64,000 nt of DNA. Source: Mobula birostris. Its lineage: Eukaryota. The notes below the pieces were generated by a model. That model was not told the origin of the DNA. It did not search any database and was given only the letters and a program-made list of their open reading frames with translations. Location: the NCBI RefSeq assembly GCF_030028105.1, contig NC_092379.1, forward strand, positions 25,661,821-25,725,820, read 5' to 3'. The stretch's first letter is position 1. Every line of letters begins with the position of its first letter. This document shows, in pieces, positions 1 through 59,997 of the stretch. The translations under genes and the position numbers were made by a program.

Positions 1-150
1 TGGCTCTCCAGGGCTAAGGGCGACTCGGGCGGGTGGTGGGGGGGGGGGGGTAGGGCGATGTGGTTACAATTTAATCAGGAGGGAAGCCAGAGTGACGGGA
101 GCTAGACGACAGTGTCTGCGTTGCGGGGTCAATGAATGGCAGGTTCGTAC

Positions 151-2504
151 TGTCACAAGGTGCGCGCTAGGAAGGATGCAAGTGCAAGGCACAGGCACTA
201 GGAACAGTACTTGGCTAGAGTAGGGACGTGACAGGATACAAACAAGGAGCAGGGACAAGAACGCAGACTTGGCCTAAGTCATGGAGTAGACAGTGATCCC
301 GGACAAGAAACTATGAACTAGGAGCCTGGGCTTGGGAACTCGGAACCAGGACTAGAAACCATGAACTAGGAATCCGTGCCAGATATCGACAAAGACCCAG
401 AACCTGGTTCCTGCGTCGGACTCGGACTCAAGAACTAGGCAAGTACATGACATGGCTTCAGGACAGGACGTAGCTGGGGCTAGAGCTTTGAGTCTTGAGG
501 GTGGGGTCTTGGGTCTTGGGGCTGCAGGCTGGGGTCTTGCGTCTTGAGGCTGCAGGCAGGGGTCCTGGGGCCTGAATCTGCAGGCTGGGGTCTTGAAGGG
601 CGAAGTGCGAGGCTGGGGTCTTGAGGCTTGTGGCTCGAGGCTGCGTTCTAGAGGCTTGAGGCTGTGGTCATGAGGCTTGAGACTCGAGGCTGGGGTGGAG
701 GCTTGAATCTGGAGGCTGGGGTATTGAAGCTTGAGGCTGAAGGTTAGGGTTAGATGAATGAGTGTCGAGGCTCGGGTCCTGGGGCTTGAGGCTGGAGGCT
801 GGGGTCATGAGGCTTGAGCCTCGAGGCTGGGGTCTTGTGGCTTAAGTCTCGAGGCTGGGGTCTTGAGGCACAGGTGGAGGCTGGTGTCTTGCGGCTTGAG
901 CCTGGGTCTTGAGGCTTGACGATGGATGCTTGGGGCTGGAGGATGGGTTCTTGAAATGCAGAGGCTGATAACTTGGAGGTTGGAGCGCAGAGACAGAAGG
1001 GGAACTGTACATGAATGTAGAACCTTGACTCATCCTTCGAAAGCCAGGACTCATCTTTAACACGTTGGGATGGGATCCTGAGGCTTGAGGCTGGAGGCTT
1101 GGGTCCTGAGGTTTGATGCTCGAGTTTGGAGTCTTGAGGCTTGAGGAACGAGGCTGGGGTCTAGTGGATTTAGACTCCAGGCTGGGAACTTGAGGCTTGT
1201 AGCTCGAGGCTGGGGTCTTGAGGCTTGGGGCACGAGGCTGGTGTCTTCACTCACAGGCTGGAAGCTGGTGTCTTGCGGCTTGGGGTTGGGTCTTGAGGCT
1301 TGAGGATGGAAGCTGGGGGCTGGAGGCTGGGGTCTTGGACTGCAGAGGCTGATAACTCGGAGGTTGGAGCGTAGAGACAGAAGGGGAACTGTACATCATT
1401 GTAGAACCTTGACTTATGCTTCCTGAGGCTTGAGGCTCGGGGCTGGGGTCTTGAGGATTGAGGCTTGACGCTGTGGTCTTGAGGCTTGAGGCTCGAGGCT
1501 GGGGTCTTGAGGCTTGCGGCTCGAGGCTGGGTTCTTCAGGATTTAGCTTCGAGGCTGGGGCCTTGAGGCTTAAGGTTTGAGGGCTGGGTCTTGGGGCTTG
1601 ATGTTGGAGCTGCGGGCTGAAGTTTGGGTCTTCGAATGCGGAGGCTGATAACACGGAGTCAAGAGCCCGAAGACAGGCTGGGAACTGTACATCAACATAG
1701 AACTGGGACTTACACTTCGAAAAGCCGGGACTCACGTTTAAAACGACACTAACATGAGAATGCACAGTATATAGACATAGAGCTGGTTCTTATGCATAGA
1801 CAAGCCGGAACTCAACTTTATCACCACACCAAGGCGGGAGAATATCCCTCTGTCGGGTAAGGGCAGAGCGGCCTGACTTACCCAACAGATGCAAAGAAAA
1901 GACAAGACAGATCCCCACACATGTAACGGCAGAACGGCCTGACTTACCCCATGGAGGCGAGATCAAGAGGGGACAGACCCAATCGTAGAGTAAAGGCAGA
2001 ACGGCCTGGCTTTCCCCACGGAGGCGAGGGCAAGATTGGATAAACACCGAAGAACGACAGACTGTTCCATCCCTACATCTGGGATGCTCTGAGTCGCAGT
2101 TACGGCCAACTATCTCAGCTGACTACGGAAACAGCCGGACCCCTACCTTGCTCGGAGTGGCTGATCGCCACTCAGTTGACCCGGGAAATGGCCGACCCAT
2201 ACAGCAAAGATAGTCCAACTACCGACAGCAAGGCTCCATGAAGCGATGGTGCTCTACCACAGCCTAAAGATTGTAAGTGGCCGCTCGAGCCTGTCAACAG
2301 CAGGTTACTCCCAGGAAATCTTGACAACGCAAACCAGCGGCCTACACTCGACGACAAGGCTACTTATATTCCAAGCGCCAAGATGGGAATCAGTTGCCAC
2401 TGATTAACCCACCTGAAACAAGGGACAGCTGGAAGACCCGGAGTCCTGATTACATGGACCGGACCGTGAACCGGAAAGCGGACATCACGGATCGGACCAT
2501 GTCA
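151..2504 (-). repeat. LTR unit A (~2.35 kb) with 28-bp minisatellite and a triplicated internal module
   Basis: TGTCACAAGG start; GAGGCTGGGGTCTT-based repeats; GAACTGTACAT..TAGAAC block at ~1000, ~1385 and ~1682; TATA-like AATATAAG on minus near 2362-2369. Confidence 0.75.
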
Positions 2505-2696
2505 GTCACGCGCACACCACCCCTCCGCCACCCCCACCCCACACTTTCTATGGGAGCCTACGGGCGAGCAAAGTTGTTCTTCAGGAACAAGGACTACTCC
2601 GGCGGATTGCGGAGTTGGGTGTGGAGTGTTCAATCAGAAGGGAAGATACGGTGACGGGAGTATGCTTTGCTGCGTCCATGAATGGCAGTTTCATTC

Positions 2697-4573
2697 TGTC
2701 ACTAGGTGCCGGCTGGTACGGATCCAGGTGCACGATAGAGCGTCTGAAGTACTGGGAACAGGAATTGACTAGTGTGGGGACGTGACAGGATACTGACAAG
2801 GAACAGGGACTAAAACGCAGACCTGGTCTAGGACATGGACTAGACAGGGAACCCGGACAAGGAACTATGAACTAGGAGCCTGGGCTTGGAAAGGCGGGAC
2901 CAGGACCAGGAACACAGAACTAGGAGCCTGCACTTGGACTCCAAGCCAGCAAGTGGACAAAGACACAGAACCTGGCTACTGCCTCGGGCTCGGAAACCAG
3001 AACTTGGCAAGGTCATCATGGTAACAGGACAGGAGGTGACTGGGGTCTAGAGGCTTGAGGCTACAGGATGTGGTCTTGGGTCTTGAGGCTGCCGGTTGGG
3101 GTCTTGGGTCTTGAGGTTGCAGGCTGGGTCTTGGGTCTGGAGGCTGCAGTCTGGGGTCTTGTGTCTTGATGCTGTAGGGTGCGGTTTTGGGAGTTGAGGC
3201 TGCAGGATGGGTTCTTGGGTCTTGAGGCTGCAGGCTGAGGTCTACGGTCTTCAGCCTGCAGGCTGGGGTCTTGGGTCTTGAGCCTCGAGGCTGGGGTCCT
3301 GAGATTGGAGTCTAGAGGCTTGGGTCCTGACGTTTGGGGCTAGAGGCTGGGGTCTTGACGATGAGGCTTGACGCTGGGGTCTTCAGTATTGAAGCTCGAG
3401 TCTGGGGTCTGGAGGATTGTGGCTCGAGGCTGGGATCTTGAGGGTTTAGCCTCAAGGTTGGAGTACTGAGCATTGAGGCTCGAGGCTGGGATGTTGAGGT
3501 TTGAGGTCGAGGCTGGGGTCTTGAGGATTTAGGCTCGGTGCTGGGGTCTTGATTCGTAAGGCTCGAAGCCGGCGTCCTGAAGCTTGAAGCTCGAGGCAAG
3601 GGTCTTATGATTTGAGGCTCGAGACTGGGGTCTTGAGGCTTGAGGTTTGAGGCTGGAGTCTTGGCTTTGATATTGGAGTTGGCGGTGGAGTTTCGGGTCT
3701 TGGAATGCGGAGGCTGATAACTCGAAGTCAGGAGCCCGAAGGCAGGCTCGAAACTGTACATCACCATAGAACCAGGACTTACTATTCGAAAAGCCGGGAC
3801 TCACGTTTAAAATGACACTAACATGAGACTGGACAATACATAGACATAGAGCTGGTTCTTATGCATAGAGAAGTCGGAACTCAACTTTATCACCACACCA
3901 AGGTGGGACAGGTCCCACTGTAGGGTAACGGCAGAGCGGCCGGACTTACAAACAGAGGCAAAGAAAAGACAAGGCAGATCCCCGCACATGTAACGGCAGA
4001 ACGGCCTGACTTACCCAACGGAGGCGAGATCAAGACGGGACAGACCCAATCGTAGGGTAAAGGCAGAGCGGCCTGGCTTTCCCCACAGAGGCGAGGACAG
4101 GATGGGACAAACACCGAAGAACGACAGACTGTTCCATCTCTGCATCGGGGTTGCTCCGAGTCGCATTTACGGCCAGCAACCTCGGCTGGCTACGGAAACG
4201 GCCGGATCCCTACCTAGCTCGGAGTAGCTGACGGCCACTCAGGTGGCCAGGGAAACGGCCGAACCCATGCCGCACAGGCAGATCCAACGACCGACACAAG
4301 ACTCCATGAAGTGAATGTTCTCCAACGCAGCCTAAATATGTCAAGTGGCCGCTCGAGCCTTCCACCTGCCGGTTTCTCCCAGGGAATCTTGACAAGACGA
4401 ACCAGCAGCCCACAATCTACCCCAAGGCTACTCATATTTCAAGCCCGAAGGTGGAAATCAGGAGCCTATGATTAACCCAACTGAAACAAGGGACAGCTGA
4501 AAAGACCCGGAGTCCTGATTCCACGGACCGGGCCGTGGACGGGAATGCGGACATCATGGACCGGCCCATGTCG
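2697..4573 (-). repeat. LTR unit B (~1.88 kb)
   Basis: Colinear with unit A; starts TGTCACTAGG, ends CCATGTCG. Confidence 0.75.
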
Positions 4574-4740
4574 GTCACGCCTCCCCACTTTTGGGCGAGC
4601 AAAGAGGTTCTTCCGGACTAAGGCCGACTCGGGCGGGTAGCGGGTTATGGGTTGGATTGTTCAATCAGGAGGGAAGCCACTGTCACGAGAGTTAGAGGAC
4701 ACTGTCTGCTTTCCTGCGTCCATGAATGGCAGGTTGATTC

Positions 4741-6612
4741 TGTCTCTAGGTGCGCGCCGGGACGGATCCAGGTGCAAGACACAGCGACTGAAGTACTGGG
4801 AACAGTAAGTGATTAGAGTGGGGACTTGACATGATACTGACATGGAGCAGGGACTAAATCGCAGACTTGGTGTAGGACATGGACCAGACAGGGAAACCGA
4901 ACAAGAAACTATGAACTAGGAGCCTGGGCTTGGACGCCGAGCCAGAGACTGGACAAAAACACAGAACCTGGGTCCAGCCTCGGGCTCGGAAAACAGAACT
5001 TGGCAAGGTCATGACATGGCAGCAGGACAGGAAGTGGCTGGTGTCTAGAGGCATGAGCCTTCAGGCTGGAGTCTTGCGTCGTGAGGCTGCAGGCTGGGGT
5101 CTTGAGTCTTGCGGCTGCCTGTTGGCGTCTTGGGTCTTGAAGCTGCAGGCAGGGGTCATAGGTCTTGTGGCTGCAGACAGGGGTCATTGGTCTGGAGGAT
5201 GCAGGCTTTGGTCTTCGGTTTTGAGGCTTCAGGCTGAGGTCTTGTGTCATGAGGCTGCAGGCTGGGGTCTTGGGTCGTAAGCCTCGAGGCTGGAGACTCG
5301 AGGCTTGGGCCCTGACGTTTGAGGCTCGAGGCTGGGGTCTTGAGGTTTGAAGCTTGATGCTGGGGTCATGAATATTAAAGCTCGAGTCTGGGGTCTTGGG
5401 GATTGTGGCTCGAGGCTGGGGTCCTGAGGATTGAGGCACGAGGCTGGTGTCTTGAGGATTGAGGATCGAGGCTGGGATCTTGAGGATTTAGTCTCCGTGC
5501 TGGGGTCTTGTGGCGTAAAGCTCGAGGCTGTGCTCCTGGGCATGAGGATCGAGGCTGCGGTCGTGTGGCATAAGGCTCGAGGCTGTGGTCTTGAGGTTTG
5601 AGGATCGTGGCTGGGGTCTGGAGGCTTGAAGCTCGAGGCTGGGGTATTGAGGCTTAAGGCTTCACACTGCAGTCTTGAGACTTGAGGCTCAAGGCACGGG
5701 ATCTTGAGCCTGGCAGTTCGAGGTTGGAGTCTTGGGGCTTGAGTTTGGAGGCTGGGGCTGGTGTTTTGGGGTCTTGGAATGCGGAGGCTGATAACTCGGA
5801 GGCTGGAGCTCAGAGACAGACTGGGGACTGTACATCAACATAGAACCGGGATTTACCCTTCCAAATCCGGGACTCATCTTTAAAGCGACACTAACGTGAG
5901 AATATTCGGAACATAGAAACAGAGCTGGTACTTAACCTTAGACAAGCCGGCACTCAACTTTATCACCACACCAAGCTGGGACACGTACCTCAACGGGTAA
6001 CGGCAGAACGGCCTGACTTACCCAACTGAGGAAAAGTAATGACAAAACAGATCCCCACGCATGGTAACGGCAGAAGGTACTGACTTACCCCATGGAGGCG
6101 AGGACAAGAGGGGACAAATCTAACCTTGGGTAACGGCAAAACTGCCTGACTTTCCACTCGGCGGCGAGGACAGGAAGGGGCAAACACCAAAGAACGACAG
6201 ACTGTTCCATCTCTGCATCGGGGATGCTCCGAGTCGCAGTTACGGCGTGCTACCCCAGCTGACTCGGAAACAAACGTATCCGTACCTTGCTCGGAGTGGC
6301 TGCCGGCCACTCAGCTGGCCCGGAAGATGGCCGTATCCATACCGCAAGAACATCTGCGACGACCGACAGCAAGGCTCCATGTAGCGATGGTTCTCTAACG
6401 CAGTCTAAAGATTGTAAGTTGCCGCTCGAACCTTCCACCGGCAGGTTACTCCCAGGGACTCTTGACAAGGCAAACCAGCAGCCCACACTCGACCACAAGG
6501 CTATTTCTATTCCAAACCTCAAGATGTGAATCAGGTGGCAATGACGGACCCAACTGAAACAAGGTACAGCTGAAAGAACAGGAGTCCTGAGCCCTCGGAC
6601 CGAAACATGTTA
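4741..6612 (-). repeat. LTR unit C (~1.87 kb)
   Basis: Colinear with units A and B; starts TGTCTCTAGG, ends CATGTTA with a short terminal deletion. Confidence 0.7.
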
Positions 6613-6808
6613 GCTCCGCACCCCCTCCCCCCCCCCACACACACACCTTTAATAGGATCTCCGGGCAACCGAAGAGGTTCTCCAGGACAAAGGAGGACTC
6701 AGGCTCGTGGGAGGGGGGGGGGTGGAACTCAATAAGGAGGGAAGCCAGGGTGACGGTAGTTAGGCGACAGTGTCTGCGTTGCTGACTCCATGAATGGCAG
6801 GTTCGTTC

Positions 6809-8269
6809 TGTCACATGTGCGCGCTGGAATGGACCCAAATGCAAAACACATGCACTGAAGTACTAGGAACTGGACTTGACTAGAGTAGAGACGTGACAGG
6901 ATACAGACAAGGAAAAGGTACAAGAACGCAGACATAGGCTAGGACATGGAACAGACAGGGAACTGTGAATTTGGTGCCTGGGGTTGGGAAGGCGGGACCT
7001 AGACCAGGAGCCACGAACAAGGAGCTTGTGCTTGTACTCCGAGCCAGAGACTGGAGAAGGACCCAGAACCTGGGTCCTACCTCGGGCTCGGATCTCTGAA
7101 CTAGGCAAGGACATCACATTGCTACAGGACAGGACGTGACTGGGGTCTAGAAGCTTGAGGCTTGAGGCTGGGGTTTTGGGTCTTGATGCTGCAGGCTGGG
7201 GTCTTGGGTCTTGAGGCGGCAGGCTGGGGTCTTGCGTCTTGAGGATGGAGGCTGCGATCTTGCGTCTTGAGGCTGCAGGCTGCGGTCATGGGTCTTGAGG
7301 CTACAGGCTGGATCTTGGATCTTGAAGCTGCAGGCTTGGGTCTTGAGTCTCGTGGCTGGGGTCTTGAGGCTTGAAGCTCGAGGCTGCGGTTTTGAGACTT
7401 GAGGTTGGAGGATGGGGGTCTTGAGGCTTATGGCTGGAGGCTGTGGACTGGAGATTGGGGTCTTGAAAGGCGGAGGCTGATAATTTGGAGGCTGGCTCGG
7501 AGACAGACCGGGATCTGTACTTCAACATGGAACCGGGACTTACCCTTCGAAAAGCCGGTACTCAAGTTTAACACGACACTAAACTGAGACTGGACAGCAC
7601 ACATAGAACTAGAGCAGGGACTTATCCTTAGTCAAGCCGGGGCTCAACTTTATCTCCACACCTAGGTGGGACGAGTCACTCGGTCGTGTAACGGCAGAAC
7701 GGTCTGACATACCCAACAGTTGCAAAGATAGGACAAGTCAGATACCCCTGCAGGGCAATGGCAGAACAGCCTAACTTACCCCACGGGGGCGAGGACAAGA
7801 AGTGACAAACACCAAAAAACGACAGACAGTTCCATCTCTTCATAGGGGTTGCTCCGAGTTGCAGTTACGGCGAGAGACCTCTGCTGGCTACGGAAACAGT
7901 CGGATCCCAACCTAGCTCGGAGTGGCTGACGGCCACTCAGCAGTTCCGGGATACAGCTGAATCCATTCCGCAATGACGCCTCCGACTACCGACAGCAAGG
8001 CTCCATGAAAAATGTTTCTCTAACGCAGCCTAAAGATGACAGGTGTCCGCTCCATCCTTCCGCCGGCAGGTTACTCCCAGGGAATACTGACAAGTGTAAC
8101 CAGCAGCCCACACTCAACCCCATGGCTTCTTTATTTGAAGCCCCAATATGGGAATTAGGTGCCTATGATTAACCAAACTGAAACAACGGAAGGCTGGAAG
8201 ACCCGGTGTCCAACGTCCTCGGACCGGACCATGAACCGGAATGCGGACTTCAAGGACCGGGCCATGCCA
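6809..8269 (-). repeat. LTR unit D (~1.46 kb), the 5'-most LTR of the array on minus
   Basis: Starts TGTCACATG, ends CCATGCCA; followed by unrelated sequence (GTGTA...). Confidence 0.75.
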
Positions 8270-8376
8270 GTGTATAAGTCCTGTTCCTACGCCCTTTTCC
8301 CAAGGAGGTGTCCAGGCTCTGTGTTCCGTGTTCTTGTCACCCAATACCAATGCTCTGTCTTGTGCGCTCACGTCTA

Positions 8377-8510
8377 TCAAGACCAAGGTCTTCTGCTTTC
8401 CAGTCCTGACAAGACCAAGTCTCTGTGCTCCAGTCCTGCCAAGATCAAGTCTCCGTATTCAAGTCCTGCCAAGAACAAGTTCTGTGTTCCAGTCCTGCGG
8501 AGATCAAGGC
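8377..8510 (+). repeat. ~30-bp tandem repeat (CCAGTCCTGCCAAGACCAAGTCTCTGTGCT-like), ~4 copies
   Basis: Unit starts at 8400, 8430, 8460 and 8489, with a partial copy from ~8377. Confidence 0.8.
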
Positions 8511-8863
8511 AGAAAAGCAGGACCTTTGACACATCTAGTCTGTAAAACAAATTGAACTACCCTTTTCCCAAAGAGGTGTACCGGATCCATAATCCTCCAC
8601 AGACAAATCATTTCACACTCTCACGAAGCTCTAAGATAAGAAAATTCTACTCAATTTCATTTGAGCCTTTTTCACTAAAGCCATGATCGCCAGTTGTAGC
8701 CCAATCCAACCTCAGTGGAAGAACGTTGTTTTTTGTAAGTGTGAGTCATTGCACTTCGGTATATCTGTAACACATCTCCCCCCACCCAACCCCAATCTAC
8801 TACTTCCAATGAGTAATATTCTAATATATTCAATATTTCCTTATAATTAAGGTGGGGTGTATG

Positions 8864-9425
8864 GGGTGTCAGGGAAGGGTAGCACCTCTGGTGGGGGAAC
8901 ATGTTGCGTCCTTTTCAGGGCGGTTAGTCCACCTTTGGTCCCCACCTGGCACTCAGCTCTCACCTGTGGCTCTCCGTAGCTGTTTGCAAGCGACAGCGGC
9001 CACACCCCGGGCAACGGCTTCGACAAGCCGGCTAAACCAGGTGAAGGTAACCGACAGGTCTAAAACCCTCGGTGTGATAGGGAGTTGTCTATCCCAGCAC
9101 GTGAAGACAGACTCCGGCGGATTGAGCGGTCAACACCTATGGAAGGTCCAACGGTGAAGAAGGCGGTCTCTGCAAGCGTCGTGGAACGTGCAGAGCAGGA
9201 CAAGACACAGAAGACGTCCTGGTCATCCACTGCACCTAGTCCCATCTCCAGCCGTCTAGAGTCTGTCTTGCCACTGGATCCAGATGGGAATTAGGAAGAG
9301 AGAGTGAGGCTGACGCTGCGCAACTCTCCCTCATTTAAATCCAAATCACGCGCTAGTCTCGACACCATCATAATGGTGTCGAAGTCTTCATCGACGTCAA
9401 CGATGGACGAACAACCATAACTAAG
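8864..9425 (+). mobile_element. GC-rich interspersed repeat, possibly an RTE-related short retroposon
   Basis: Shares GATTGAGC, GGTCCAACGGT.AAGAAGGC and GACG.CCTGGTCATCCACTGCA blocks with 20215-20405 (opposite strand); perfect 10-bp hairpin at 9359-9382. The family assignment is inference. Confidence 0.4.
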
Positions 9426-9974
9426 GTAATCCACTCCCAGTAACTTCCTCGTAAATTGTCTCAGTTTTTGTTCAAAGCTATTTACATATTTTCAATAGAT
9501 AGGCCAATGTGCCTAATGATTTATATCCCACACCATCGACCCGTGACGCCACTTTCAATGACTGAGAGTCTTTCATTCGCAGAGCCCTTTTATACTGCAA
9601 ACCCCTCATTGCAGAACATACACTGTGTAAGATCTACCTGATGTGCAGCATCCCACACTTGTCTGCAAGTAATTACTTCTGCTATTCATCATCCCATTTG
9701 ACTAGCTAGTCCAGACCCGGTGCAAGTTCTGATCGTCTTCGTCGTTGTCCACGACATCTTCAATATTTATGCTACCGACGAATGTGCCAAACTCTTAACC
9801 ACTTTCTATTTTAGATCATTGACACGGACAGCATACATAAACGAAACAAACACAAATGCCTGCAGCAGCCCACCAGTTACAAGTCTCCAGTCGGAGAAGC
9901 AAATATCTGCAATGAGTCTCTGTTGTCTCCTACAAAGTCAATGTCTTATTCAACTTACAGTTAAACTTTGAACT

Positions 9975-12014: not shown

Positions 12015-12190
12015 NNNNNNNNNNNNNNNNNNNNNNNNNNNNNNNNNNNNNNNNNNNNNNNNNNNNNNNNNNNNNNNNNNNNNNNNNNNNNNNNNNNNNN
12101 NNNNNNNNNNNNNNNNNNNNNNNNNNNNNNNNNNNNNNNNNNNNNNNNNNNNNNNNNNNNNNNNNNNNNNNNNNNNNNNNNNNNNNNNNN
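12015..12190. other. Assembly gap (176 N)
   Basis: Run of N flanked by TCCA/TCTA-like simple repeats. Confidence 0.98.
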
Positions 12191-16817: not shown

Positions 16818-17716
16818 CTAATGTGATGACACTGGTAATCCTCTCAAGAGCAAAGTGTGGCCTTTCCAGGTGTGTCAACTGTTACTTGGAGTCTATGGTG
16901 GTGACTGATCTTCTAGTCATTTTCACCGCGGTGATACTCAGCCGGATCAGCGTGACTTACGCACCGGGTACTTTCCTGTCCCTGACCCCGGTGTGCAGCA
17001 TCAGTAGTGTACTCGTTTATGTAGCCAGGGACAGTTCGGTCTGGCTGACCGTCGCATTCACTTTCGACCGATTTGTTGCCATTACTTGCCAGAATCTTAA
17101 AACAAAGTATTGTACCGGGAGATCAGCTGCGTTGATTATAGGCTCTGTCTGTGCTCTAAGTTGTGTAAAGAACATCCCCTTCTACTTTATTTACCAGCCT
17201 TCCTACGTCATTAATGGTGTCCCCTGGTACTGTAATGTGAAATGGAATTTCTATCATTTCCCGATATGGAAAGCCTTCAATTGGATCGATTGCATTCTCA
17301 CACCTTGGCTACCATTCATCTTCATTCTGCTTCTGAACATTTTGACGGTCAGGTATATTGTCATTGCCAGCAGAGCCCGCAGGAGGCTCCGGACTAGCGA
17401 ACTCCAGTGCGATCCTGAGGCAGAAAGTCGCAAGAAGTCGATCATCTTACTCTTCGCCATCTCCGGTAGTTTTATTCTTCTGTGGATGACCTATGTAGCA
17501 AACTTCCTCTATGTCGAAATTACCAAAGATAAATATTCCGCAGGATTCAATTTGAAAGACCCGAAGTTCGTGTTCAGGGAAGTGGGGAACATGTTGCAGC
17601 TGCTGAGCTCTTGCACTAACACGTGTATTTATGCCGTGACCCAGACGAAATTCAGACAGCAAATGTACGATGCGTTAAAGTATCCTTTCAAACTATTTTT
17701 CGCAGTGATTCACTGA
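16818..17716 (+). CDS. GPR139/GPR142-like class A GPCR, exon 2 (spliced product 322 aa)
   Basis: Acceptor TTTTCTGCAG|CT; uninterrupted ORF with ILSRAKCGLS, DLLV (TM2), FDRFVAI (DRY-like), KSIILLFAISGSFILLW (TM6) and SCTNTCIY (TM7). Orthology is not resolved, so no symbol is given. Confidence 0.9.
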
Positions 17717-20214: not shown

Positions 20215-20405
20215 CATGTACGGGGCAGGTTACAACAGTGGTTTGCCTTTGCCTTCTGCCACGTGAGGTTAAGGAGATCTCCACCTCTTGCAGTGGATGA
20301 CCAGGGCGTCTAAGCGCCCTCTCCTACCGTTACCGCTCCACCAACGCCTGCTGGCCTGCCTTCTTGACCGTTGGACCACCATTCTGTCTCTTCTGCTCAA
20401 TCTGC
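20215..20405 (-). mobile_element. Fragment of the repeat family at 8864-9425, ending in GAAGGCAAAGGCAAACCACTG
   Basis: Shared blocks listed above; GGCAAACCACT resembles RTE/BovB-derived SINE tails. Confidence 0.4.
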
Positions 20406-26098: not shown

Positions 26099-29000
26099 TG
26101 TTGGAAGGGTGTGGCTTGGAACGGACCCAAGTGCAAGACATAGTCACTGAAGTACTAGGGTCATGGCTAGGATACAGGGCGATGGCAGGGACATGGACAG
26201 GAAAACCAGGAACCCGGAACAAAACTGGAGAAAAGAGCTGGATCCCGGGCTTGGACTCTTAGCCAGAGACTGGACAGGGACCAGGTACCTGGATCATTCC
26301 TCTGGCTCGGACCTTAGAACTAGGAAACGGCGAGGCTTGGCTGGCAGGTAGGACGAGGCTGGAGTCTTAGAGACTTGAGCCGAGGCTTGACAGGAGGCAG
26401 GGGACTTGAGGCGAGGCTTGGCAGGAAGCAGGAGACTTGAGGAGAGGCTTGGCAGGAAACAGGCGGCTAGAGACTTGAGGCGAGGCTTGACAGGAGGCAG
26501 GAGGCTGGAGTCTTCAGACTTGAGGCTTGGGGCTAGAGGTGAGGCTTGGCCGGAGGCAAGAGGCTCGAGAATTCAAGCTTGAGGCGAGGCTTGGCAGGAG
26601 GCAGGATGGACTCCGAGCCAGAAACTGGACAAGGATCCAGTACCTCTGTCTTGTCTCTGGCTGTGACCCCAGACCTAGGCAAGAACGAGGTTTGGCAGGC
26701 AGGCAGGACGAGGATGGAGTCTTCAGGCATAAGGCTAAAGGCGAAGCTTTGCAGGAGACAGGAGGCTGGTGCCCTCAGGCTTGAGGCTTGAGGCGAGAGG
26801 CAGGAGGCTAGAGCCGAGGCTTGGCAGGAGGCACGAGGCTGGAGACGAGGCTAGGCAGGAGGCTGGAGCCTTCAGTCTTGAGACTAGGCAGAAGGCTGGA
26901 GACTTCAGGCTTGATGCCAGGCCTGTTCCTCCCGGGCAGGCGCGGTACTCCTGGGCACGCCACGGAACACCTGGGCAGGGCGCGGATCACCTAGGCAGGG
27001 CGCGGTACTCTTGGGCAGGGCGCGGTACTCCTGGGCAGGTCGCGGAACTCCTGGGTAGGGCGCGGATCAACAGACGACAGAGGCAAGGGACAGGAAAGGA
27101 CAGAACCAACCACAGGTAACGGCAATACGGCCTCGGTTATCTGGGCCGAGGCAAGGGACAAAAAGGGAGCTAGGTATATGGTGGCTCCAGGACAAGACTG
27201 CAGGCGAGACGAGGCGAGAGTTACCAGCAAGACAAGGCAAGGCTTCTGGCAAAGCAAGGCGAGATGACAACTTCAGACGAGGCGACAGTTACCGGCAAGA
27301 CAAGGCAGGACTTCAGGTGAGGAAACAGAAAGCAGAGGAAGGGATACAAGGAGTAAGTACAAGATCAATTCAGCAGCCACGCCCTGTACTCTGGAGGTAT
27401 TTATGCTACCAGCCCCAACAGGCATCACAGGCATCAGCTGCCTTAATTAGTGTTTAACAGTAACAAAAACAGGGTCGACAGGAAAACCTGTAGCAAACGT
27501 CGATGCAACGGACCGCGAACCGGAATACGGACTTCACGGACACGATCGTGACGGGAATCCCCCCAACCTTCCCCACGGCAGCTTCCTGGCGGCCAAACAG
27601 AGCATCCAGACTTTGGGCGACCCGGGAGGGTGGGAGGGTGTTTAACAGAAAGGAAACACGGGTGGCAGGAGGGAAACGATAGTGTCTCTGTCGCAGTGTC
27701 CATGGTTGGCTGGATTGTTCTGTTGCACGGTGGTGGCTTGGGACGGACCCATGTGCAAAACACAAGCACTAATGGACTAGGGACAGGAGTCGGATGCAGG
27801 GCGATTTCAAGGACATGGACAGGAAAACCAGTAACCCGGAACAGGACTGGACAAAAGAGCTTGGAGCCAGGAATTGGACTCGGAGCCAGAGACTGGACAG
27901 GGACCCAGTACCTGGGTCTTGCCTCTGGCTCGGACCTCAGAACTAGGCAAGGACGAGGCTTCGCTGGCAGGCAGGACGAGGCTGGAGACTTAGAGACCTG
28001 AGGCGAGGCTTGGCTGGCAGGCAGGACGAGTCTGGAGTCTTAGAGACTTGAGGCGAGGCTTGGCAGGAGGCAGGAGACTTGAGGCGAGTCTTGCCAGGAG
28101 GAAAGAAACTTGAAGCGAGGCTTGGCAGGAGGCTGGAGACTTGAGGCGATGTCTGGCAGGAGGCATGAGACTTGAGACGAAGCTTTTCAGGAGGCAGGAG
28201 ACTTGAGGCGCAGCTTGGAAGGAGGCAGGATGGACTCCGAGCCAGAGACTGGACAAGGACCCAATACCTGGGACTTGCCTCTGACTCGGACTCCAGAACT
28301 AGGCCTGGACGAGGCATGGCTGGCAGGCAGGACGAGGCTGGAGTCTCAGAGACTTGGGGCGAGGCTTGGCAGGAGGCTGGAGACTTGAGGCGAGGCTTGG
28401 CAGGAGGCAGCAGGCTGGAGTCCTCAAGCTAGAGGCGAGAGACTTGAGGCGAGACTTGGCAGGAGGCAGGAGGCTAGAGACTTGAGGCGAGACTTGGCAG
28501 GAGGCATGAGGTTGGAATCTTCAGGCATGAGGCTTGAGGCTAGAGGCGAGGCTTGGCAGGAGGCATGAGGTTGGAATCTTCAGGCATGAGGCTTGAGGCT
28601 AGAGGCGAGGCTTGGCAGGAGGCAGGATGGACTCCGAGCCAGAGACTGGAGAAGGACCCAATACCTGGGACGTGCCTCTGACTCGGACCCCAGAACTAGG
28701 CAAGGACGAGACTTGATAGGCAGGCAGGACGAGGCTGGAGTCTTCAGGCCTGAGGCTAGAGGCGAGGCTTGGCAGGAAGCAGGAGGCTGGCGTCCCCAGG
28801 CTTGAGGTTTGAAACTAGAGGCCAGGCGTGGCAGGAGGCAGGAGGTTGGCGTCCTCAGGCTTGAGGTTTGAGGCTAGAGGCGAGGCTTGGCAGGAGGTAG
28901 GAGGCTAGAGACGGTGCTAGGCAAGAGGCTGGAGCCTTCAGGCTTGAGGCTAGGCAGGAGGCTGGAGCCTTCAGGCTTGAGGCTAGGCAGGAGGCTGAAG

Positions 29001-29809
29001 ATTTCAGTCTTCCAGCTAGGCAGGAGGCTGGAGTCTTCAGGCTTGACGCAAGGCAGGAGGCTGGAGTCATCAGGTTTGTGGCTAGGCAGGAGGCTGAAGT
29101 CTTCAGGCTTGAGGCTAAGCAGGAGGCTGGAGTCTACAGGCTTGAGGCTAAGCAGGAGGCTGGAGTCCTCAGGCTTGGGGTTAGGCAGGCACGTGGGCAG
29201 GGCACGGTACTCCTGGGCAGGGCGCCGATCACCCGGGCAAGGGAGCAGATGACCTGGGCAGGGCGCGGACCACCACCCGAGAGAGGCAAGGGACAGGAAG
29301 GGACAGAACCAGCCACAGGTAACGGCAAGACGGCCTGGCTTACCTGGGCGGAAGCAAGGGACAGGAAGGGAGCTAGGTATTCGGTGGCTTCAGGATAAGA
29401 CTGCAGGCGAGACGAGAGTTACCAGCAAGACAAGAGAAAGCTTCAGGCAATGCAACGCGAGACGAAAAGTTCAGGTGCGGCGAGAGGTACCGGCAAGTCA
29501 AGGCAAGGCTTCAGGCAATGCAAGGCGAGACGAGAGCTTCAGGCGAGGCAACAGTTACCGGCAAGACAAGGCAGGGCTTCAGCCGAAGAAACAGAAGACT
29601 GAGGAAGGGATACAACGAGTAAGGACAAGAGCAATCCAACAGCCACGCACTGGTCTCTAGAGGTATTTATGCCGCCACCCCAACAGGCATCAGCTGCCTT
29701 AATTAGTGCTTAACAGGAACATAAACAGGGTAGACAGGAAAACCTGGAGCAACGGTCAATGGACCGGACCGTGAACCGAAATACGGACTTCACGGACCGG
29801 TCCCTGACA
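26099..29809 (-). mobile_element. Complete non-autonomous two-LTR element: 5' LTR 27721-29809, 167-bp internal region 27554-27720, 3' LTR 26099-27553
   Basis: TGT...GACA termini, flanks TAATC/TAGTC (5-bp TSD with one mismatch), PBS-like GAACAATCCAGC, ATG-MDTATETLSF Gag vestige, PPT GGGGAAGGTTGGGGGG, TATA-like CATAAATA in both LTRs. Confidence 0.8.
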
Positions 29810-35214: not shown

Positions 35215-35826
35215 TGTAACGTTCCGTTATTTTGGCTCGTGTATGTCTAGGGGAAATCCCGCCCAGCACCTGCTTCAGCAGTCCCCTCAGGGTCAATCGT
35301 CGCCCGAATCAATCACAAACATCAATCATCAGCCAGCACACCCAGTAAATTTTAACACATACACTTTATAGATATTACTAATTCTAGGGCATTAATATAC
35401 ATGTGATACAGAGAGGAAAGTAATGAAAAAAAAGGCGCCAACACTTATTCAAAGTCCAAGTTCTTCGCGCGCTACCGTTGGAGCTCAAGTTCGACGTCAG
35501 ACGACCACCCGAATTCCGTCGACCCACGGCTCGGGACCACCCGAAGTGATCGACCGGAGCCTCTCCGCACGTCCGCCGTCCTCCTCGTCTCTCCTCCCGA
35601 CTCCCCGCCAAAACTCAGTCCACAGTCATATCATACAGCATGGCATCCGAAAACAAAACGATACATAACCACCCATTGGCTAATAGCACCCTCTTATCAC
35701 CCTCTAAACCACAATAAACTGCTAGCGCAAACTCTCTGCAGCGTTAAAACACAACAAAGCCGCATTCCACAGATTAACATAACAAAAATCGCCATTTTAA
35801 ATGTAACAAAAGAAAGACCCCGTACA
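35215..35826 (-). repeat. Gypsy 3' LTR
   Basis: Direct repeat of 41702-42313; preceded on minus by the PPT. Confidence 0.95.
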
Positions 35827-35840
35827 CTCTCCCCCCACCT
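35827..35840 (-). promoter_or_regulatory. Polypurine tract AGGTGGGGGGAGAG
   Basis: Abuts the 3' LTR. Confidence 0.9.
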
Positions 35841-35848
35841 AAAAAAAG

Positions 35849-40333: not shown

Positions 40334-40339
40334 TTTCCC
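40279..40339 (-). promoter_or_regulatory. -1 ribosomal frameshift signal: G GGA AAC slippery heptamer, 8-nt spacer, predicted H-type pseudoknot
   Basis: Heptamer at 40333-40339 in the gag frame; a -1 shift enters the pol frame (LKRGSVRERTG); stems GGCUCAGU/ACUGGAGUC and GGGAACG/CGUUCCC. Confidence 0.85.
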
Positions 40340-41625
40340 GACACCTCTCCCTTCTTGGTGGCCTGGGGGCCCTCCCCCCTCGGCGCATTTCGTCTCTCAC
40401 AATCCTTCCGTAAGTGGCCAGCTTCCCCACAGTGGTAGCACGCCCCCGGCCACTCACATTCCCGGCGGAAATGCCCCTCTCTCCCACAGTTATAGCACCC
40501 ACTACTCGCCGCCTCTCTCCTCCCGATACGGGCCCCCGAGGACCCCTTGGATTTCTCTGGTCTCATCCCGGCTACCACCTCCTGAACCGCTGAAGACCGT
40601 CCCTGAGGGTCCGAGCCCCCTGGTCGGCCCAAAGCACACTCCTCGGCCCGTACCTCTCGGATCAGCCGTCCGAATGATGGAGGGGAGCTCTGCTTAAATG
40701 ACTGCCGTACACTCCAAGCCACCCTGTCATCCTCCCGGGAACCGCTACATATCTGGCTCATCCTTAACTCCGCCACATCGTCCTCCCTCACTATACCTCG
40801 TCGCAGCAACCCCGTAAGCTTTCCTTCCAGCCTGAAAGCATAGTCGGAGAGCTTTTCCCCTCTTCTCTGCCCCATCCGTTGAAACTCTGCTAAATGCCGC
40901 CAGGGATCCCCTGACAGTCCAAACACTTCCTCCAAAGCGTCTAAACACTCCGATAGGGAAGCCAAGGGGCGTGCCGCTCTCAGATCGCGGACCACCCGGG
41001 CTGCCCCGCCCCTTAAGCTTTCCACCAATCGCTGTCTCTTTTCCTCATCCGAAACTGGCCACACCTCTAACAATTGGGATGTATCTTCAACCCAGGTCTC
41101 ATAGTCATCCTCCCCTTCCGGGGTGGGCTTGGCTCCCGAGAAAATTCTCAGCTTCGGGCGGTGCACCTCAACCCTTCTCGCCAGGGAGATAATGGCAGCC
41201 GTTAACTCGGCAGTCTCCTCAAGCCCATGGGGGCGAGGCCTGGCCAAACCTTCCCACTCCGCACCTCTACCTCTTGCTACGGGCACCCGGCCGGGGGCCT
41301 CAACTAGCTCCTCCGGCACCTCCTCACTTGCGTCCTCGGGGAGGGTATGGAGACCCCACGGCCCCGCCTCCCCCTGGACATGGACTGTCGCTGGTAATTC
41401 TAAAGCCATGACGTCGGCACTCGCCCGCACCAACATCCAGCAAGCCTCCAGTTCTTTCCCACCCCTTCTAGCTACAAGTTCTACCTGCCCGATACCTTTA
41501 ATCAAACTCAACCCTCGCACCAGTACCTCTGCCGGAATGCGATAATCGACCCCGCTTACCACACACGCATGATTCACCGGTACCTCCTCCATTTCACACC
41601 AACTTACAATCTTATCTCGCTCCAT
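40315..41625 (-). CDS. gag: Gag with PNMA-like capsid and two CCHC zinc knuckles (436 aa from MERDK)
   Basis: LRIFSG..YETW..EKRQRLVESLRG PNMA-type motifs; CYNCGREGHFRREC and CYHCGEAGHLRKDC. Confidence 0.93.
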   Translation of the reverse strand: MERDKIVSWCEMEEVPVNHACVVSGVDYRIPAEVLVRGLSLIKGIGQVELVARRGGKELEACWMLVRASADVMALELPATVHVQGEAGPWGLHTLPEDASEEVPEELVEAPGRVPVARGRGAEWEGLARPRPHGLEETAELTAAIISLARRVEVHRPKLRIFSGAKPTPEGEDDYETWVEDTSQLLEVWPVSDEEKRQRLVESLRGGAARVVRDLRAARPLASLSECLDALEEVFGLSGDPWRHLAEFQRMGQRRGEKLSDYAFRLEGKLTGLLRRGIVREDDVAELRMSQICSGSREDDRVAWSVRQSFKQSSPPSFGRLIREVRAEECALGRPGGSDPQGRSSAVQEVVAGMRPEKSKGSSGARIGRREAASSGCYNCGREGHFRRECEWPGACYHCGEAGHLRKDCERRNAPRGEGPQATKKGEVSGNLREAQ

Positions 41626-41679
41626 CTTCACACCACTTACCGCAACCACAAGTACAACTTTCCCGAAAAAAAAATCCAA

Positions 41680-41699
41680 ATCCCTGACGGTAGCCCCCA
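41680..41699 (-). promoter_or_regulatory. Primer-binding site, tRNA-Pro-like with a 2-nt bulge
   Basis: TGGGGGCT[AC]CGTCAGGGAT versus canonical tRNA-Pro PBS TGGGGGCTCGTCCGGGAT, 2 nt after the 5' LTR. Confidence 0.7.
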
Positions 41700-41701
41700 C
41701 T

Positions 41702-58189: not shown

Positions 58190-59997
58190 TGTCAGAAGGA
58201 GGTGGCTAGGAACGGGCACAAGTGCAAGACACAGAAACTGAAGTACGAGGCACAGGACTAGGGCACAGGGTGAGGGCAAGTACATGGACACGAAAACCGG
58301 GAATCCGGAACAGGACTGAAGAAGAGAGCTAAGAGCCCGGGCTTGGACTCCGAGCTTGAGACTGGACAAGCACACAATACCTCGGTCTTGCTTCTGGCTC
58401 GAACCCCAGAACTAGACAAGGACGAGGCTTGGCTGGCAGGCTGGACGAGGCTGGAGTCTTCAGGCTTGAGGCTAGGCAGGAGGCTGGAGGATGGAGGGAG
58501 GAGACTGGAAGCTCCTCCTGGGCAGGGCGCGGGTCTCCTTCCGACGGAGGCAAGGGAGAGGAATGAACAGAACCAACCGTAGGTGACGGCAATACGGCCT
58601 GGCTTACCCGACGGAGACAGGGGATAGGAAATGACAGCGTCTCTGTCGCTGGGTACATGGTTGGCTGGATCGTTCTGACATAAGGGGTAGCTAGGAAGGG
58701 AACCACGTGAAAGACACAGACAATGACGTACCAGGGACAGGACTAGGATACAGGGTGAGGGCAAGGACATGGACACGAAAACCGGGAACCCGAAACAGGA
58801 CTGGACAAGAGAGCTTGAAGTCCAGGCTTTACTCCGAGCCACAGACTGGACAAGGACCTAGTACCTGGGTATTGCCTCTGTCCCGGACCCCAAAACTAGG
58901 CAAGTACGAGGCTGGCAGGCAGGACGAGGCTGGAGTCTTCAGGCTTGAGGCTAGAGTCTAGAGGCGAGTCTTCAGTCTTGAGGCTAGGCAGGAGGCAGGG
59001 GTCTTCAGGCTTGAAGCTAGGCAGGAGGCTGTAGTCTTCGGGCTTGAGGCTAGGCAGGCGGCTGGAGTCTTCAGGCCTGAGGCTAGGCAGGAGGCTGGAG
59101 TCTTCAGGCCTGAGGCTAGGCAGGAGGCTGGAGTCTTCAGGCCTGAGGCTAGGCAGGAGGCTGGAGTCTTCAGGTCTGTGGCTAGGCAGGAGGCTGGACT
59201 CTTCAGGTCTGTGGCTAGGCAGGAGGCTGGACTCTTCAGGTCTGTGGCTAGGCAGGAGGCTGGACTCTTCAGGTCTGTGGCTAGGCAGGAGGCTGGACTC
59301 TGCAGGCTCGTGGCTAGGCAGGAGGCTGGACTCTTCAGGCTTGAAGCTAGGCAGGAGGCTATAGTCTTCAGGCTTGAGGCTAGGCGGAAGGCTGGAGGAT
59401 GGAGGCAGCAGACTGGTAGCTCCTCCTGGGCAGGGCGCGGATCTCCACCAGACGGAGGCAAGAGATAGGAAGGGACAGAGCCAACCGTAGGTAGCGGCAA
59501 TACAGCCTGGCCTACCCGATAGAGGCAGGGGAATGGAAGAGACAAAACAAACCGCAGCTAACAGCAAGATGGCCTAGCTTACCCGACGGAGACCAGGGAC
59601 AGAAAGGGAGCTAGGTACGGTCTGTCTCCAGGACAAGACAGCAAGACAAAGCAAGGTTTCAGGCAATGCAAGGGAAGACAGAACTTCACGCGAGGCGAGA
59701 GTTACCGGCAAGACAAGGCAGGGCTTCAGGCGTTGCAAGGCAAAACAAGAACTTCAGGCGAGGCGAGAGTTACCGGCAAGGCTTCAGGCGAGGAAACAGA
59801 AGGCAGAGGATGGGATGCAAGGAGGTAGGACACGCCCTGGTCTCTGAAGGTATTTATGCAGCCAGCCCCAACGAGCATCAGCTGTCACAATTAGATTTCA
59901 ACAAGAACAGAAACAGGGTAGACAGGAAAACATGGAGTAAGTGTCAATGGACCAGACTGTGAACTGGAATACGGACTTCACGGACCGGACCATGACA
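58190..59997 (-). mobile_element. Internally deleted copy of the non-autonomous LTR family: 5' LTR 58676-59997, PBS/Gag start ~58616-58675, truncated 3' LTR 58190-~58615
   Basis: TGTCA...TGACA termini, perfect 5-bp TSD AGGAG (58185-58189 and 59998-60002), PBS GAACGATCCAGCC, MYPATETLSF. Confidence 0.85.
58920..59395. repeat. 33-bp minisatellite (GGCTGGAGTCTTCAGGCCTGAGGCTAGGCAGGA), about 13-14 copies, inside the LTR
   Basis: Direct periodicity; explains the 11-aa repeats in the ORF track. Confidence 0.9.

What the first reader, a model, noticed from the sequence alone, without database searches (positions are those of the whole stretch)
1..8269. Shared-LTR tandem array of giant-LTR, near-empty retroelements
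Seen: at least four 1.5-2.4 kb LTR-like units alternate with ~170-200 bp spacers that each keep only a PBS-like motif, the first Gag codons and a PPT, giving LTR-int-LTR-int-LTR-int-LTR-int. Established: tandem arrays with shared LTRs are known for plant TRIMs such as Cassandra, whose LTRs are short. Inference: this is an analogous vertebrate system, but with LTRs about ten times longer than the internal region. The units are visibly diverged, so the array is either old or built from different family members by recombination. I do not recognise a description of this architecture in vertebrates, but could not search.
Basis: partly seen in the sequence, partly recalled or inferred. Interest (0 to 1): 0.8.

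Follow-up and report, generated by a model that had tools for sequence, protein, structure and literature searches.

The report
Old tandem array of near-empty LTR retroelements
Window 1-8269 is a real but old and decayed chain of a gene-less LTR retrotransposon, with 1.5-2.4 kb LTRs sharing 167-196 bp interiors, that grew in place by unequal recombination; this is a known kind of structure with unusual proportions.

Summary
The structure is real. Four LTRs (151-2504, 2697-4573, 4741-6612, 6809-8269; TG...CA ends) alternate with homologous interiors of 192, 167 and 196 bp. A cut interior at 1-150 implies a fifth LTR upstream.

A sister family in the same window shows that LTR, ~170-bp interior, LTR is the mobile unit. 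Two separate insertions (26099-29809 and 58190-59997) each carry 5-bp target-site duplications. Their interior is homologous to the array's.

No ORF matches Pfam, and there are no Rfam or tRNA hits.

The array grew in place. In the last ~950 bp of the LTRs, A1 and A2 are the closest pair (998/1000 bootstraps). In the first 330 bp, A2 and A3 are closest (996/1000). So the last duplicated block ran from mid-LTR, through an interior, to mid-next-LTR. That is the mark of unequal crossover in the LTR's 28-bp minisatellite.

Divergence is K2P 0.13-0.26, so the array is old. Single-copy short-read contigs bridge three junctions. The LTR is highly repeated genome-wide.

Not supported: "first Gag codons", and a canonical PBS or PPT next to the LTRs.

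Shared-LTR arrays are already reported in vertebrates (zebrafish TRIM LTR-11_DR, HERV-K108). Only the ~10:1 LTR-to-interior ratio looks unusual.

Unchecked scan notes report similar arrays elsewhere in this genome.

The parts
1..150 (+). Interior I0, cut at its 5' side by the window start. It implies at least one more LTR upstream.
   Evidence: Aligns with I1-I3 and with the family-B interior. Positions 77-148 match 6735-6806 at 89%.
151..2504 (+). LTR A1 (2354 bp). Starts TGTCAC and ends CATGTCA. Its 28-bp minisatellite (498-904 and 1071-1601) is enlarged by a duplicated block about 384 bp apart.
   Evidence: Boundaries; tandem repeats; duplication 875-1038 vs 1259-1422 at 90% (D13).
2505..2696 (+). 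Interior I1 (192 bp): C-rich tract, TGGGCGAGC motif, G-rich/purine-rich tract, and a conserved ~45-nt block next to the following LTR.
2697..4573 (+). LTR A2 (1877 bp). Minisatellite 3040-3664, 80-bp repeats 3758-3918, 66-bp repeats 3920-4109.
4574..4740 (+). Interior I2 (167 bp).
   Evidence: A single-copy contig covers 4501-4930 with 0 mismatches (record 1).
4741..6612 (+). LTR A3 (1872 bp). Minisatellite 5036-5757. About 33 nt are deleted just before its 3' terminus.
6613..6808 (+). Interior I3 (196 bp), with long C and G homopolymer runs.
   Evidence: A single-copy contig covers 6471-6888 (record 3).
6809..8269 (+). LTR A4 (1461 bp), the last LTR. Short minisatellite 7140-7443. Ends ...CCATGCCA at 8269, and the flank begins GTGTA.
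   Evidence: A contig covers 8231-8884 across the end (record 7). About 91-103 contigs per run leave the LTR at about 8266 into heterogeneous sequence (table 7).
26099..29809 (+). Sister family B, a complete two-LTR element: LTR 26099-27553, 167-bp interior 27554-27720, LTR 27721-29809. Its flanks are TAATC and TAGTC. It was used to define the LTR ends and the mobile unit.
58190..59997 (+). Sister family B, second insertion with a perfect 5-bp target-site duplication (AGGAG / AGGAG). It is a two-LTR element with a deletion: truncated 5' LTR 58190-~58630, the last ~49 nt of the interior, then the full LTR 58676-59997.
   Evidence: The left flank is not homologous to the interior.

Best explanation
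A non-autonomous, non-coding LTR retrotransposon inserted here long ago. Call it family A: LTRs of 1.5-2.4 kb, an interior of about 170-195 bp, TG...CA ends, and presumably 5-bp target-site duplications like sister family B. Its two kilobase LTRs lie only ~0.2 kb apart, so the element is in effect a 2-kb direct duplication. Out-of-register homologous recombination between LTRs (sister chromatid or homologue) added LTR+interior units stepwise. This gave LTR-int-LTR-int-LTR-int-LTR with shared LTRs. At least the last step crossed over inside the LTR's central 28-bp minisatellite. The same process in the other direction produces solo LTRs, which would explain why the LTR is far more abundant genome-wide than the interior. 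The array is now an inert fossil, with no ORFs and 12-25% divergence. Shown here: the unit structure, the homology of the interiors, the LTR ends and target-site duplications in the sister family, the mosaic divergence, and the junctions in short-read contigs. Inferred: retrotransposition by a trans-acting integrase and reverse transcriptase, + strand orientation (about 65-70% likely), the age, and the dominance of solo LTRs.
For: (1) The period, boundaries and homologous interiors come. (2) Family B shares the LTR termini and the interior. It occurs as two independent two-LTR insertions bounded by 5-bp flank repeats: AGGAG/AGGAG, and TAATC/TAGTC with 4 of 5 matching. The flanks are unrelated to the interior. 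This shows that LTR, short interior, LTR is the integrated mobile unit. It persisted while the LTRs of A and B diverged by 32-56% (uncorrected p). (3) No coding capacity or RNA family was found. (4) Mosaic divergence: in the 3' ~950 bp of the LTRs, A1-A2 are closest (p=0.148, 998/1000 bootstraps). In the 5' 330 bp, A2-A3 are closest (p=0.118, 996/1000). All other pairs are at 0.19-0.22. A sliding-window comparison shows that the shifted unit 'A1 3' part + I1 + A2 5' part' is the best match of 'A2 3' part + I2 + A3 5' part' in 18 of 20 windows. (5) The oldest LTR pairs (K2P ~0.25) are as diverged as the two LTRs of the family-B element (0.22-0.27). This fits one old founding insertion. (6) Single-copy-depth contigs bridge 4501-4930, 6471-6888 and 8231-8884. 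LTR bins sum to 10^2-10^4 times single-copy depth, and about 100 contigs per run leave the LTR 3' end into unrelated sequence. (7) The mechanism is established for LTR elements (PMC5932611 Fig. 1A; PMC3625200; PMC4079214).
Against: The array's 5' end and its target-site duplication are outside the window, so a single founding insertion is not shown. There is no tRNA-type PBS next to the 5' LTR and no polypurine tract next to the 3' LTR on the + strand. On the - strand a G-rich tract lies 5-8 nt from the LTR, so orientation and priming are unresolved. No autonomous partner was found. The intact Gypsy at 35215-42315 has unrelated LTR ends and a 4-bp target-site duplication. In the interior itself (121 ungapped columns) the I1-I2 pair is not significantly the closest: I0-I3 wins 652/1000 bootstraps. 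Gene conversion between neighbouring units could mimic part of the mosaic. Depths from Logan contigs are not copy numbers.
Confidence: 0.75

Rival explanations
1. The multi-LTR structure was made before integration, or was copied as a unit. Possible routes are reverse-transcriptase template switching, read-through transcription, or retrotransposition of an already multi-LTR master. In-place events only modified it later.
For: Multi-LTR Cassandra elements with 3-5 LTRs under one target-site duplication are common in pear and are thought to transpose as such. Template switching is a proposed route (PMC4079214). Unchecked scan notes report other three-LTR arrays with ~150-170 bp interiors in this genome, one 'under a single target-site duplication'. 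The 5' end of this array is unseen.
Against: LTRs made in one reverse-transcription event are identical at integration and should then diverge uniformly. Instead the distances are graded (0.12-0.15 vs 0.19-0.22). They are also out of register with the LTR boundaries. That requires at least one later in-place duplication.
Confidence: 0.12
2. This is a generic 2-kb macrosatellite or segmental tandem duplication that only looks like LTR plus interior. It was never a retroelement array.
For: The whole 2.07-kb unit is repeated head to tail and is full of nested tandem repeats of 28, 66, 80 and 384 bp. No canonical PBS or PPT is present. No RNA run was listed as holding the stretch.
Against: The array ends exactly at the LTR terminus ...CA. 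The same LTR-plus-interior plan occurs in family B as dispersed two-LTR insertions with 5-bp target-site duplications and TG...CA ends. Family-A LTR ends abut about 100 different sequences in the reads.
Confidence: 0.06
3. This is an assembly artefact: a mis-joined or inflated repeat.
For: The repeat-rich region sits at the window edge. The only runs that hold it well come from one sample, possibly the one that was assembled.
Against: The units differ by 12-25%, so they cannot be collapsed or duplicated copies of one sequence. k-mer contigs at single-copy depth cross three junctions with 0-4 mismatches (table 8).
Confidence: 0.03
4. Separate elements inserted next to or into one another (double insertion or nesting), rather than sharing LTRs.
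For: The family is abundant. Inter-unit divergence is similar to the divergence between separate copies in family B.
Against: There is no target-site remnant or foreign sequence at any junction. Every LTR is followed by the homologous interior and then the next LTR in phase. The mosaic pattern links neighbouring units.
Confidence: 0.03

Closest known systems
Multi-LTR TRIM arrays: Cassandra in Rosaceae (PMC4079214) and zebrafish Helenus LTR-11_DR (PMC10886601)
   Same: A non-autonomous LTR element with a tiny non-coding interior (tens to hundreds of bp). It has TG...CA ends, 5-bp target-site duplications in family B, LTR-int-LTR-int-LTR chains with shared LTRs, and many more LTRs than interiors.
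   Different: TRIM LTRs are about 100-320 bp, and the elements are under ~1.3 kb in Kojima's survey. Here the LTRs are 1.5-2.4 kb, 7.5-12 times the interior. There is no 5S- or tRNA-like pol III module in the LTR. There is no tRNA-type PBS next to the LTR.
LARDs (large retrotransposon derivatives; stated from my own knowledge, not tested here)
   Same: Non-autonomous, with kilobase LTRs and no coding capacity.
   Different: LARD interiors are several kb and conserved. Here the interior is under 200 bp.
Tandem proviruses with a shared central LTR, e.g. HERV-K108 (PMC3625200)
   Same: A vertebrate example of LTR-int-LTR-int-LTR made by LTR-LTR non-allelic recombination under the original target-site duplication.
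   Different: HERV-K108 is a coding provirus with two interiors and ~1-kb LTRs. Here there are at least four non-coding interiors and longer LTRs, and the last crossover lies inside an LTR minisatellite.
Satellites derived from LTR retrotransposons by unequal exchange (McGurk and Barbash 2018, PMC5932611; maize centromeric retrotransposon tandems, PMC3648361, seen only as a search listing)
   Same: Unequal exchange on the element's own direct repeats turns an LTR element into a tandem repeat.
   Different: Only about five units are visible here. They are old and diverged. There is no sign of satellite-scale expansion or homogenisation.

Membership tests
LTR retrotransposon (structural definition) | Long direct terminal repeats with 5'-TG...CA-3' ends and short terminal inverted repeats | tested here: met
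   The four A LTRs start TGTCAC or TGTCTC and end in the conserved CATG-NCA terminus: TCA in A1, CCA in A4, and mutated to TCG in A2 and TTA in A3. Family B starts TGTTGG or TGTCAG and ends TGACA.
LTR retrotransposon (structural definition) | Target-site duplication of 4-6 bp flanking the whole element | tested here: inconclusive
   Met for sister family B: AGGAG/AGGAG, and TAATC/TAGTC. For the array itself only the 3' flank (GTGTA) is in the window.
LTR retrotransposon (structural definition) | tRNA-complementary primer binding site within a few nt of the 5' LTR | tested here: not met
   The interior starts GTCACGC followed by a C-rich tract. The first TGG motif (TGGGCGA) lies 18-60 nt downstream. 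No tRNA set was available for a formal match. No consistent LTR-interior complementarity was found.
LTR retrotransposon (structural definition) | Polypurine tract immediately upstream of the 3' LTR | tested here: not met
   On the + strand the purine-rich tract ends about 45 nt before the LTR, and the last 45 nt are about 47% purine (hand count from the alignment). On the - strand a G-rich tract lies 5-8 nt from the LTR. Orientation is therefore unresolved.
Non-autonomous LTR element (TRIM/LARD class) | No gag/pol coding capacity between or within the LTRs | tested here: met
   The interiors are 167-196 bp. ORFs of 80 aa or more lie mostly in minisatellites and are not conserved in position. 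The three of 150 aa or more that were scanned have no Pfam hit.
TRIM (terminal-repeat retrotransposon in miniature) | Miniature size: LTRs of roughly 100-300 bp and a total length well under ~1.5 kb | tested here: not met
   The LTRs are 1461-2354 bp. A two-LTR element would be 3-5 kb.
Shared-LTR tandem array made by unequal LTR-LTR recombination | In-phase LTR-int-LTR-int structure with no target-site remnant at the junctions, plus divergence patterns that show in-place duplication | tested here: met
   Junction alignment. Mosaic closest pairs: A1-A2 in the 3' part and A2-A3 in the 5' part, each in at least 996/1000 bootstraps.
Cassandra / Helenus / Ajax (TRIMs with a pol III small-RNA module) | 5S rRNA- or tRNA-derived sequence in the LTR | tested here: not met
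   No Rfam match at gathering thresholds and no ARAGORN tRNA in the window.

The most novel reading that the evidence does not exclude
Families A and B belong to a cartilaginous-fish lineage of non-coding LTR elements. In this lineage kilobase, minisatellite-bearing LTRs flank a conserved ~170-bp interior that lacks a canonical tRNA PBS and an adjacent PPT. Replication would then use non-canonical priming, for example self-priming. The extreme LTR-to-interior ratio would make multi-LTR arrays a regular genomic form of the family rather than a rare accident.
Probability: 0.2. Interest if true: 0.6.

Novelty: new variant of a known kind. Interest (0 to 1): 0.38.

Why it matters
It gives a clear vertebrate case of how an LTR element can turn into a tandem repeat. 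The crossover point is still readable in the divergence pattern. It also shows that non-autonomous LTR elements can shrink the interior to ~170 bp while keeping, or growing, 2-kb LTRs. Annotation pipelines tuned to TRIM or full-length proportions would probably split such elements into 'unknown repeat' and 'satellite'. The missing canonical PBS and PPT, and the possible recurrence of arrays in this genome, are worth a genome-wide look. The locus itself is an inert fossil, and the general mechanism is textbook.

Tried and rejected
- **Rfam and ARAGORN**. I looked for ribozyme, 5S or tRNA modules of the retrozyme, Cassandra or Helenus type. None was found.
- **Pfam on the three largest ORFs**. 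Nothing was found.
- **Interior-to-LTR complementarity for self-priming**. Only short, inconsistent matches appeared, with no conserved position.
- **Consensus folding of the four interiors**. The structure is weak (-8.5 kcal/mol), with 3 compensatory pairs from 4 sequences. This is not evidence.
- **Canonical AATAAA or TATAAA in the LTRs**. None on the + strand. There is only a conserved TATTTATA-like motif about 140 bp before the LTR end, whose reverse complement reads as a TATA box. It does not settle orientation.
- **The 58190-59997 copy as an LTR preceded by an interior remnant**. The upstream flank is not homologous to the interior. The copy turned out to be a deleted two-LTR element.
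- **The intact Gypsy at 35215-42315 as the autonomous partner.** Rejected: its LTR ends and PBS are unrelated, and it has a 4-bp target-site duplication.
- **The flank 8270-9600 as an inverted related LTR.** No similarity.
- **RNA runs**. None was listed as holding the stretch, which is no evidence of silence.
- **Copy numbers.** Only summed contig depths were available. I treat them as orders of magnitude only.
- **Scan look-ups by words.** Three of the five word searches gave nothing useful.
Full report
**What is there**

Window 1-8269 is GC-rich (55% against ~38-40% nearby) and G-skewed on the + strand. Self-comparison shows a ~2.07-kb period, with unit-to-unit identities of 75-85% over up to 1.5 kb (E = 0). 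No long match to this family occurs elsewhere in the window.

Conserved end motifs place the boundaries.

| Part | Coordinates | Length |
|---|---|---|
| Interior I0 (cut by window start) | 1-150 | at least 150 bp |
| LTR A1 | 151-2504 | 2354 bp |
| Interior I1 | 2505-2696 | 192 bp |
| LTR A2 | 2697-4573 | 1877 bp |
| Interior I2 | 4574-4740 | 167 bp |
| LTR A3 | 4741-6612 | 1872 bp |
| Interior I3 | 6613-6808 | 196 bp |
| LTR A4 | 6809-8269 | 1461 bp |

Because I0 is an interior, at least one more LTR must lie upstream. Homology stops exactly at 8269 (...CCATGCCA), and the flank starts GTGTA.

Each LTR has the same plan:
- a ~300-bp 5' domain;
- a 28-bp minisatellite of variable length (about 300 bp in A4, about 1.1 kb in A1);
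- two 80-bp repeats and two to three 66-bp repeats;
- a ~480-bp 3' domain.

LTR length differences come mostly from the minisatellite. A1 also carries a duplicated block about 384 bp apart, at 90% identity (D13).

**Are the units really LTRs?**

The window holds a sister family B, whose LTR termini and interior align with those of A. It gives two independent tests.

- The element at 26099-29809 is LTR (26099-27553), a 167-bp interior, then LTR (27721-29809). It runs from TG to CA, with flanks TAATC and TAGTC, 4 of 5 matching.
- The copy at 58190-59997 has a perfect AGGAG / AGGAG flank repeat.

On closer reading the second copy is not a solo LTR. It is a two-LTR element with a deletion: a truncated 5' LTR, the last ~49 nt of the interior, then a full LTR from 58676. 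Its upstream flank shows no more similarity to the interior than shuffled controls do.

So LTR, ~170-bp interior, LTR, inserted with a 5-bp target-site duplication, is the mobile unit. This plan was kept while the LTRs of A and B diverged by 32-56% (uncorrected p).

Other tests were negative:
- The three ORFs of 150 aa or more in the array have no Pfam hit. The other ORFs of 80 aa or more lie mostly in minisatellites.
- There are no Rfam families or tRNA-like modules.

The 'first Gag codons' have no support.

**Is the assembly real, and is the family dispersed?**

Only Logan contigs were available, so depth is only indicative.

- In four runs of one sample, contigs at single-copy depth cross 4501-4930, 6471-6888 and 8231-8884 with 0-4 mismatches (table 8). 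X1 single-copy depth is about 4.6-6.6.
- The units differ by 12-25%, which excludes a collapsed or inflated repeat.
- LTR bins sum to 10^2-10^4 times single-copy depth.
- The 5' half of interior I2 is covered only by this locus's own contig at 80% likeness or more. The conserved 3' block reaches about 10-25 times single-copy depth.
- About 91-103 contigs per run leave the LTR at about 8266 into sequence with only 0.4 agreement. That means many different flanks (table 7).
- A different species (organism C) carries the LTR family at similar summed depth.

Together these points fit an abundant, dispersed family that is mostly solo LTRs. This is an inference, not a count.

**How the array formed**

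Distances were computed for aligned parts outside the minisatellite.

| LTR part | Closest pair | p distance | K2P | Bootstrap support |
|---|---|---|---|---|
| last ~950 bp | A1-A2 | 0.148 | 0.16 (0.13 without CpG sites) | 998/1000 |
| first 330 bp | A2-A3 | 0.118 | 0.14 | 996/1000 |

All other pairs lie at p = 0.19-0.22.

A sliding window over shifted units was also run. It shows that 'A1 3' part, I1, A2 5' part' is the best partner of 'A2 3' part, I2, A3 5' part' in 18 of 20 windows. The youngest duplicated block is therefore out of register with the LTR. It runs from mid-LTR, through an interior, to mid-next-LTR. That is what unequal crossover inside the LTR produces, most likely in the minisatellite.

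A concatemer made in one reverse-transcription event would not show this pattern. The older pairs (K2P ~0.22-0.26) are as diverged as the two LTRs of the family-B element (0.22-0.27). This fits a founding insertion of similar age, followed by stepwise growth.

At 1e-9 substitutions per site per year, the oldest splits would be on the order of 10^8 years. This is a rough inference and the rate was not measured. Within the short interiors (121 ungapped columns) the closest pair is not resolved.

**What stays unexplained**

- On the + strand the interior begins with GTCACGC plus a variable C-rich tract.
- The first TGG-type motif (TGGGCGA, conserved in A and B) lies 18-60 nt from the LTR.
- A purine-rich tract follows, but it ends about 45 nt before the next LTR.
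- The last 45 nt are the best-conserved part of the interior and are not purine-rich.
- On the - strand a G-rich tract lies 5-8 nt from the LTR.

I favour + orientation at about 65-70%, for three reasons:
- The enhancer-like 80-bp and 66-bp repeats lie upstream of a conserved TATTTATA-like motif, which sits about 140 bp before the LTR end.
- The order is PBS-like motif first, then purine tract.
- The G skew matches the sense strand of the intact Gypsy in the window.

Against this, the reverse complement of that motif reads as a better TATA box, and no AATAAA is present. No consistent LTR-interior complementarity was found. The consensus fold is weak. No autonomous partner is in the window. The intact Gypsy at 35215-42315 has unrelated ends and a 4-bp target-site duplication.

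**Comparison with what is known**

- Shared-LTR tandems from LTR-LTR recombination are a standard outcome for LTR elements (PMC5932611 Fig. 1A).
- Multi-LTR non-autonomous elements are common for Cassandra (PMC4079214).
- In vertebrates, Kojima 2024 lists TRIM-type Helenus families in coelacanth and ostariophysan fishes. That paper notes tandem arrays of zebrafish LTR-11_DR (PMC10886601).
- HERV-K108 is a three-LTR tandem provirus (PMC3625200).

The architecture is therefore not new for vertebrates. I found no description of an element with kilobase, minisatellite-filled LTRs around an interior under 200 bp. It fails the size criterion of TRIMs and has far too small an interior for LARDs. I could not query Dfam or Repbase. 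Five full-text searches found nothing for cartilaginous fishes.

**Recurrence in this genome**

The scan's own index lists unchecked first-reader notes of the same kind elsewhere in this genome:
- s1-145713, 'very long LTRs and ~150-bp internals';
- s1-146358, 'Triple-LTR ... ~170-bp internal regions';
- s1-145903, a three-LTR array 'under a single target-site duplication';
- s1-146198, an LTR family that 'grows a different tandem array in each copy'.

Other notes (NAR-TCR cassettes, L-VJ-C clusters) suggest the genome is a cartilaginous fish. I could not inspect any of these loci, so they are leads only. If they hold, array formation is a regular property of this element type. That would be expected when 2-kb repeats sit only 0.2 kb apart.

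**Verdict**

The interpretation as a shared-LTR array of near-empty LTR elements is sound. The array is old and grew in place by unequal recombination. It is a new variant of a known kind and of moderate interest.

Noticed in passing
window 35215-42315 (- strand): An apparently intact Ty3/Gypsy element. Its two 614-bp LTRs are 100% identical. It has a 461-aa gag ORF (PNMA domain plus zinc knuckles) and a 1489-aa pol ORF (RT, RNase H, integrase). The 4-bp flank repeat is TCAG, the PBS-like sequence begins TGGGGGCTACC, and a PPT is adjacent to the 3' LTR. It is probably a very recent insertion and is unrelated to families A and B.
   Followed up: partly
window 58190-59997: This looks like a solo LTR of family B but is a two-LTR element. 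A deletion removed about 440 bp of the 5' LTR's 3' end and about 118 bp of the interior. The 5-bp duplication AGGAG is perfect.
   Followed up: yes
window 875-1038 vs 1259-1422: There is a duplicated block about 384 bp apart inside LTR A1, at 90% identity. It is younger than any unit duplication, so tandem duplication kept acting at several scales (28 bp, 384 bp, 2.07 kb).
   Followed up: partly
window ~8700-9500: A very high-copy repeat lies just downstream of the array. Its summed contig depth is about 2x10^5 against about 6.5 for single copy in run X1. One weak match lies at 20289-20377 on the opposite strand. It was not identified.
   Followed up: no
window 8378-8498: There are four copies of a 30-bp tandem repeat in the flank right after the array. 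They have no detectable similarity to the LTR minisatellites.
   Followed up: partly
window 16823-17716 (+): An intronless 297-aa ORF has a rhodopsin-family 7TM domain. Its nearest atlas clusters are GPR139-like receptors of chordates.
   Followed up: partly
window 43554-44684 (+) and 63239-63979 (-): These are non-LTR retrotransposon fragments: a reverse-transcriptase ORF, and an endonuclease (Exo_endo_phos_2) ORF.
   Followed up: no
window ~2360-2380, ~4430-4450, ~6500-6520, ~8125-8145 and the B LTRs: A conserved TATTTATA-like motif lies about 140 bp before the 3' end of every LTR in families A and B. Its reverse complement reads TATAAATA. It may be the promoter, and it bears on which strand is transcribed.
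   Followed up: partly
window 12015-12190: A run of N (assembly gap or masked stretch). It was left untouched.
   Followed up: no
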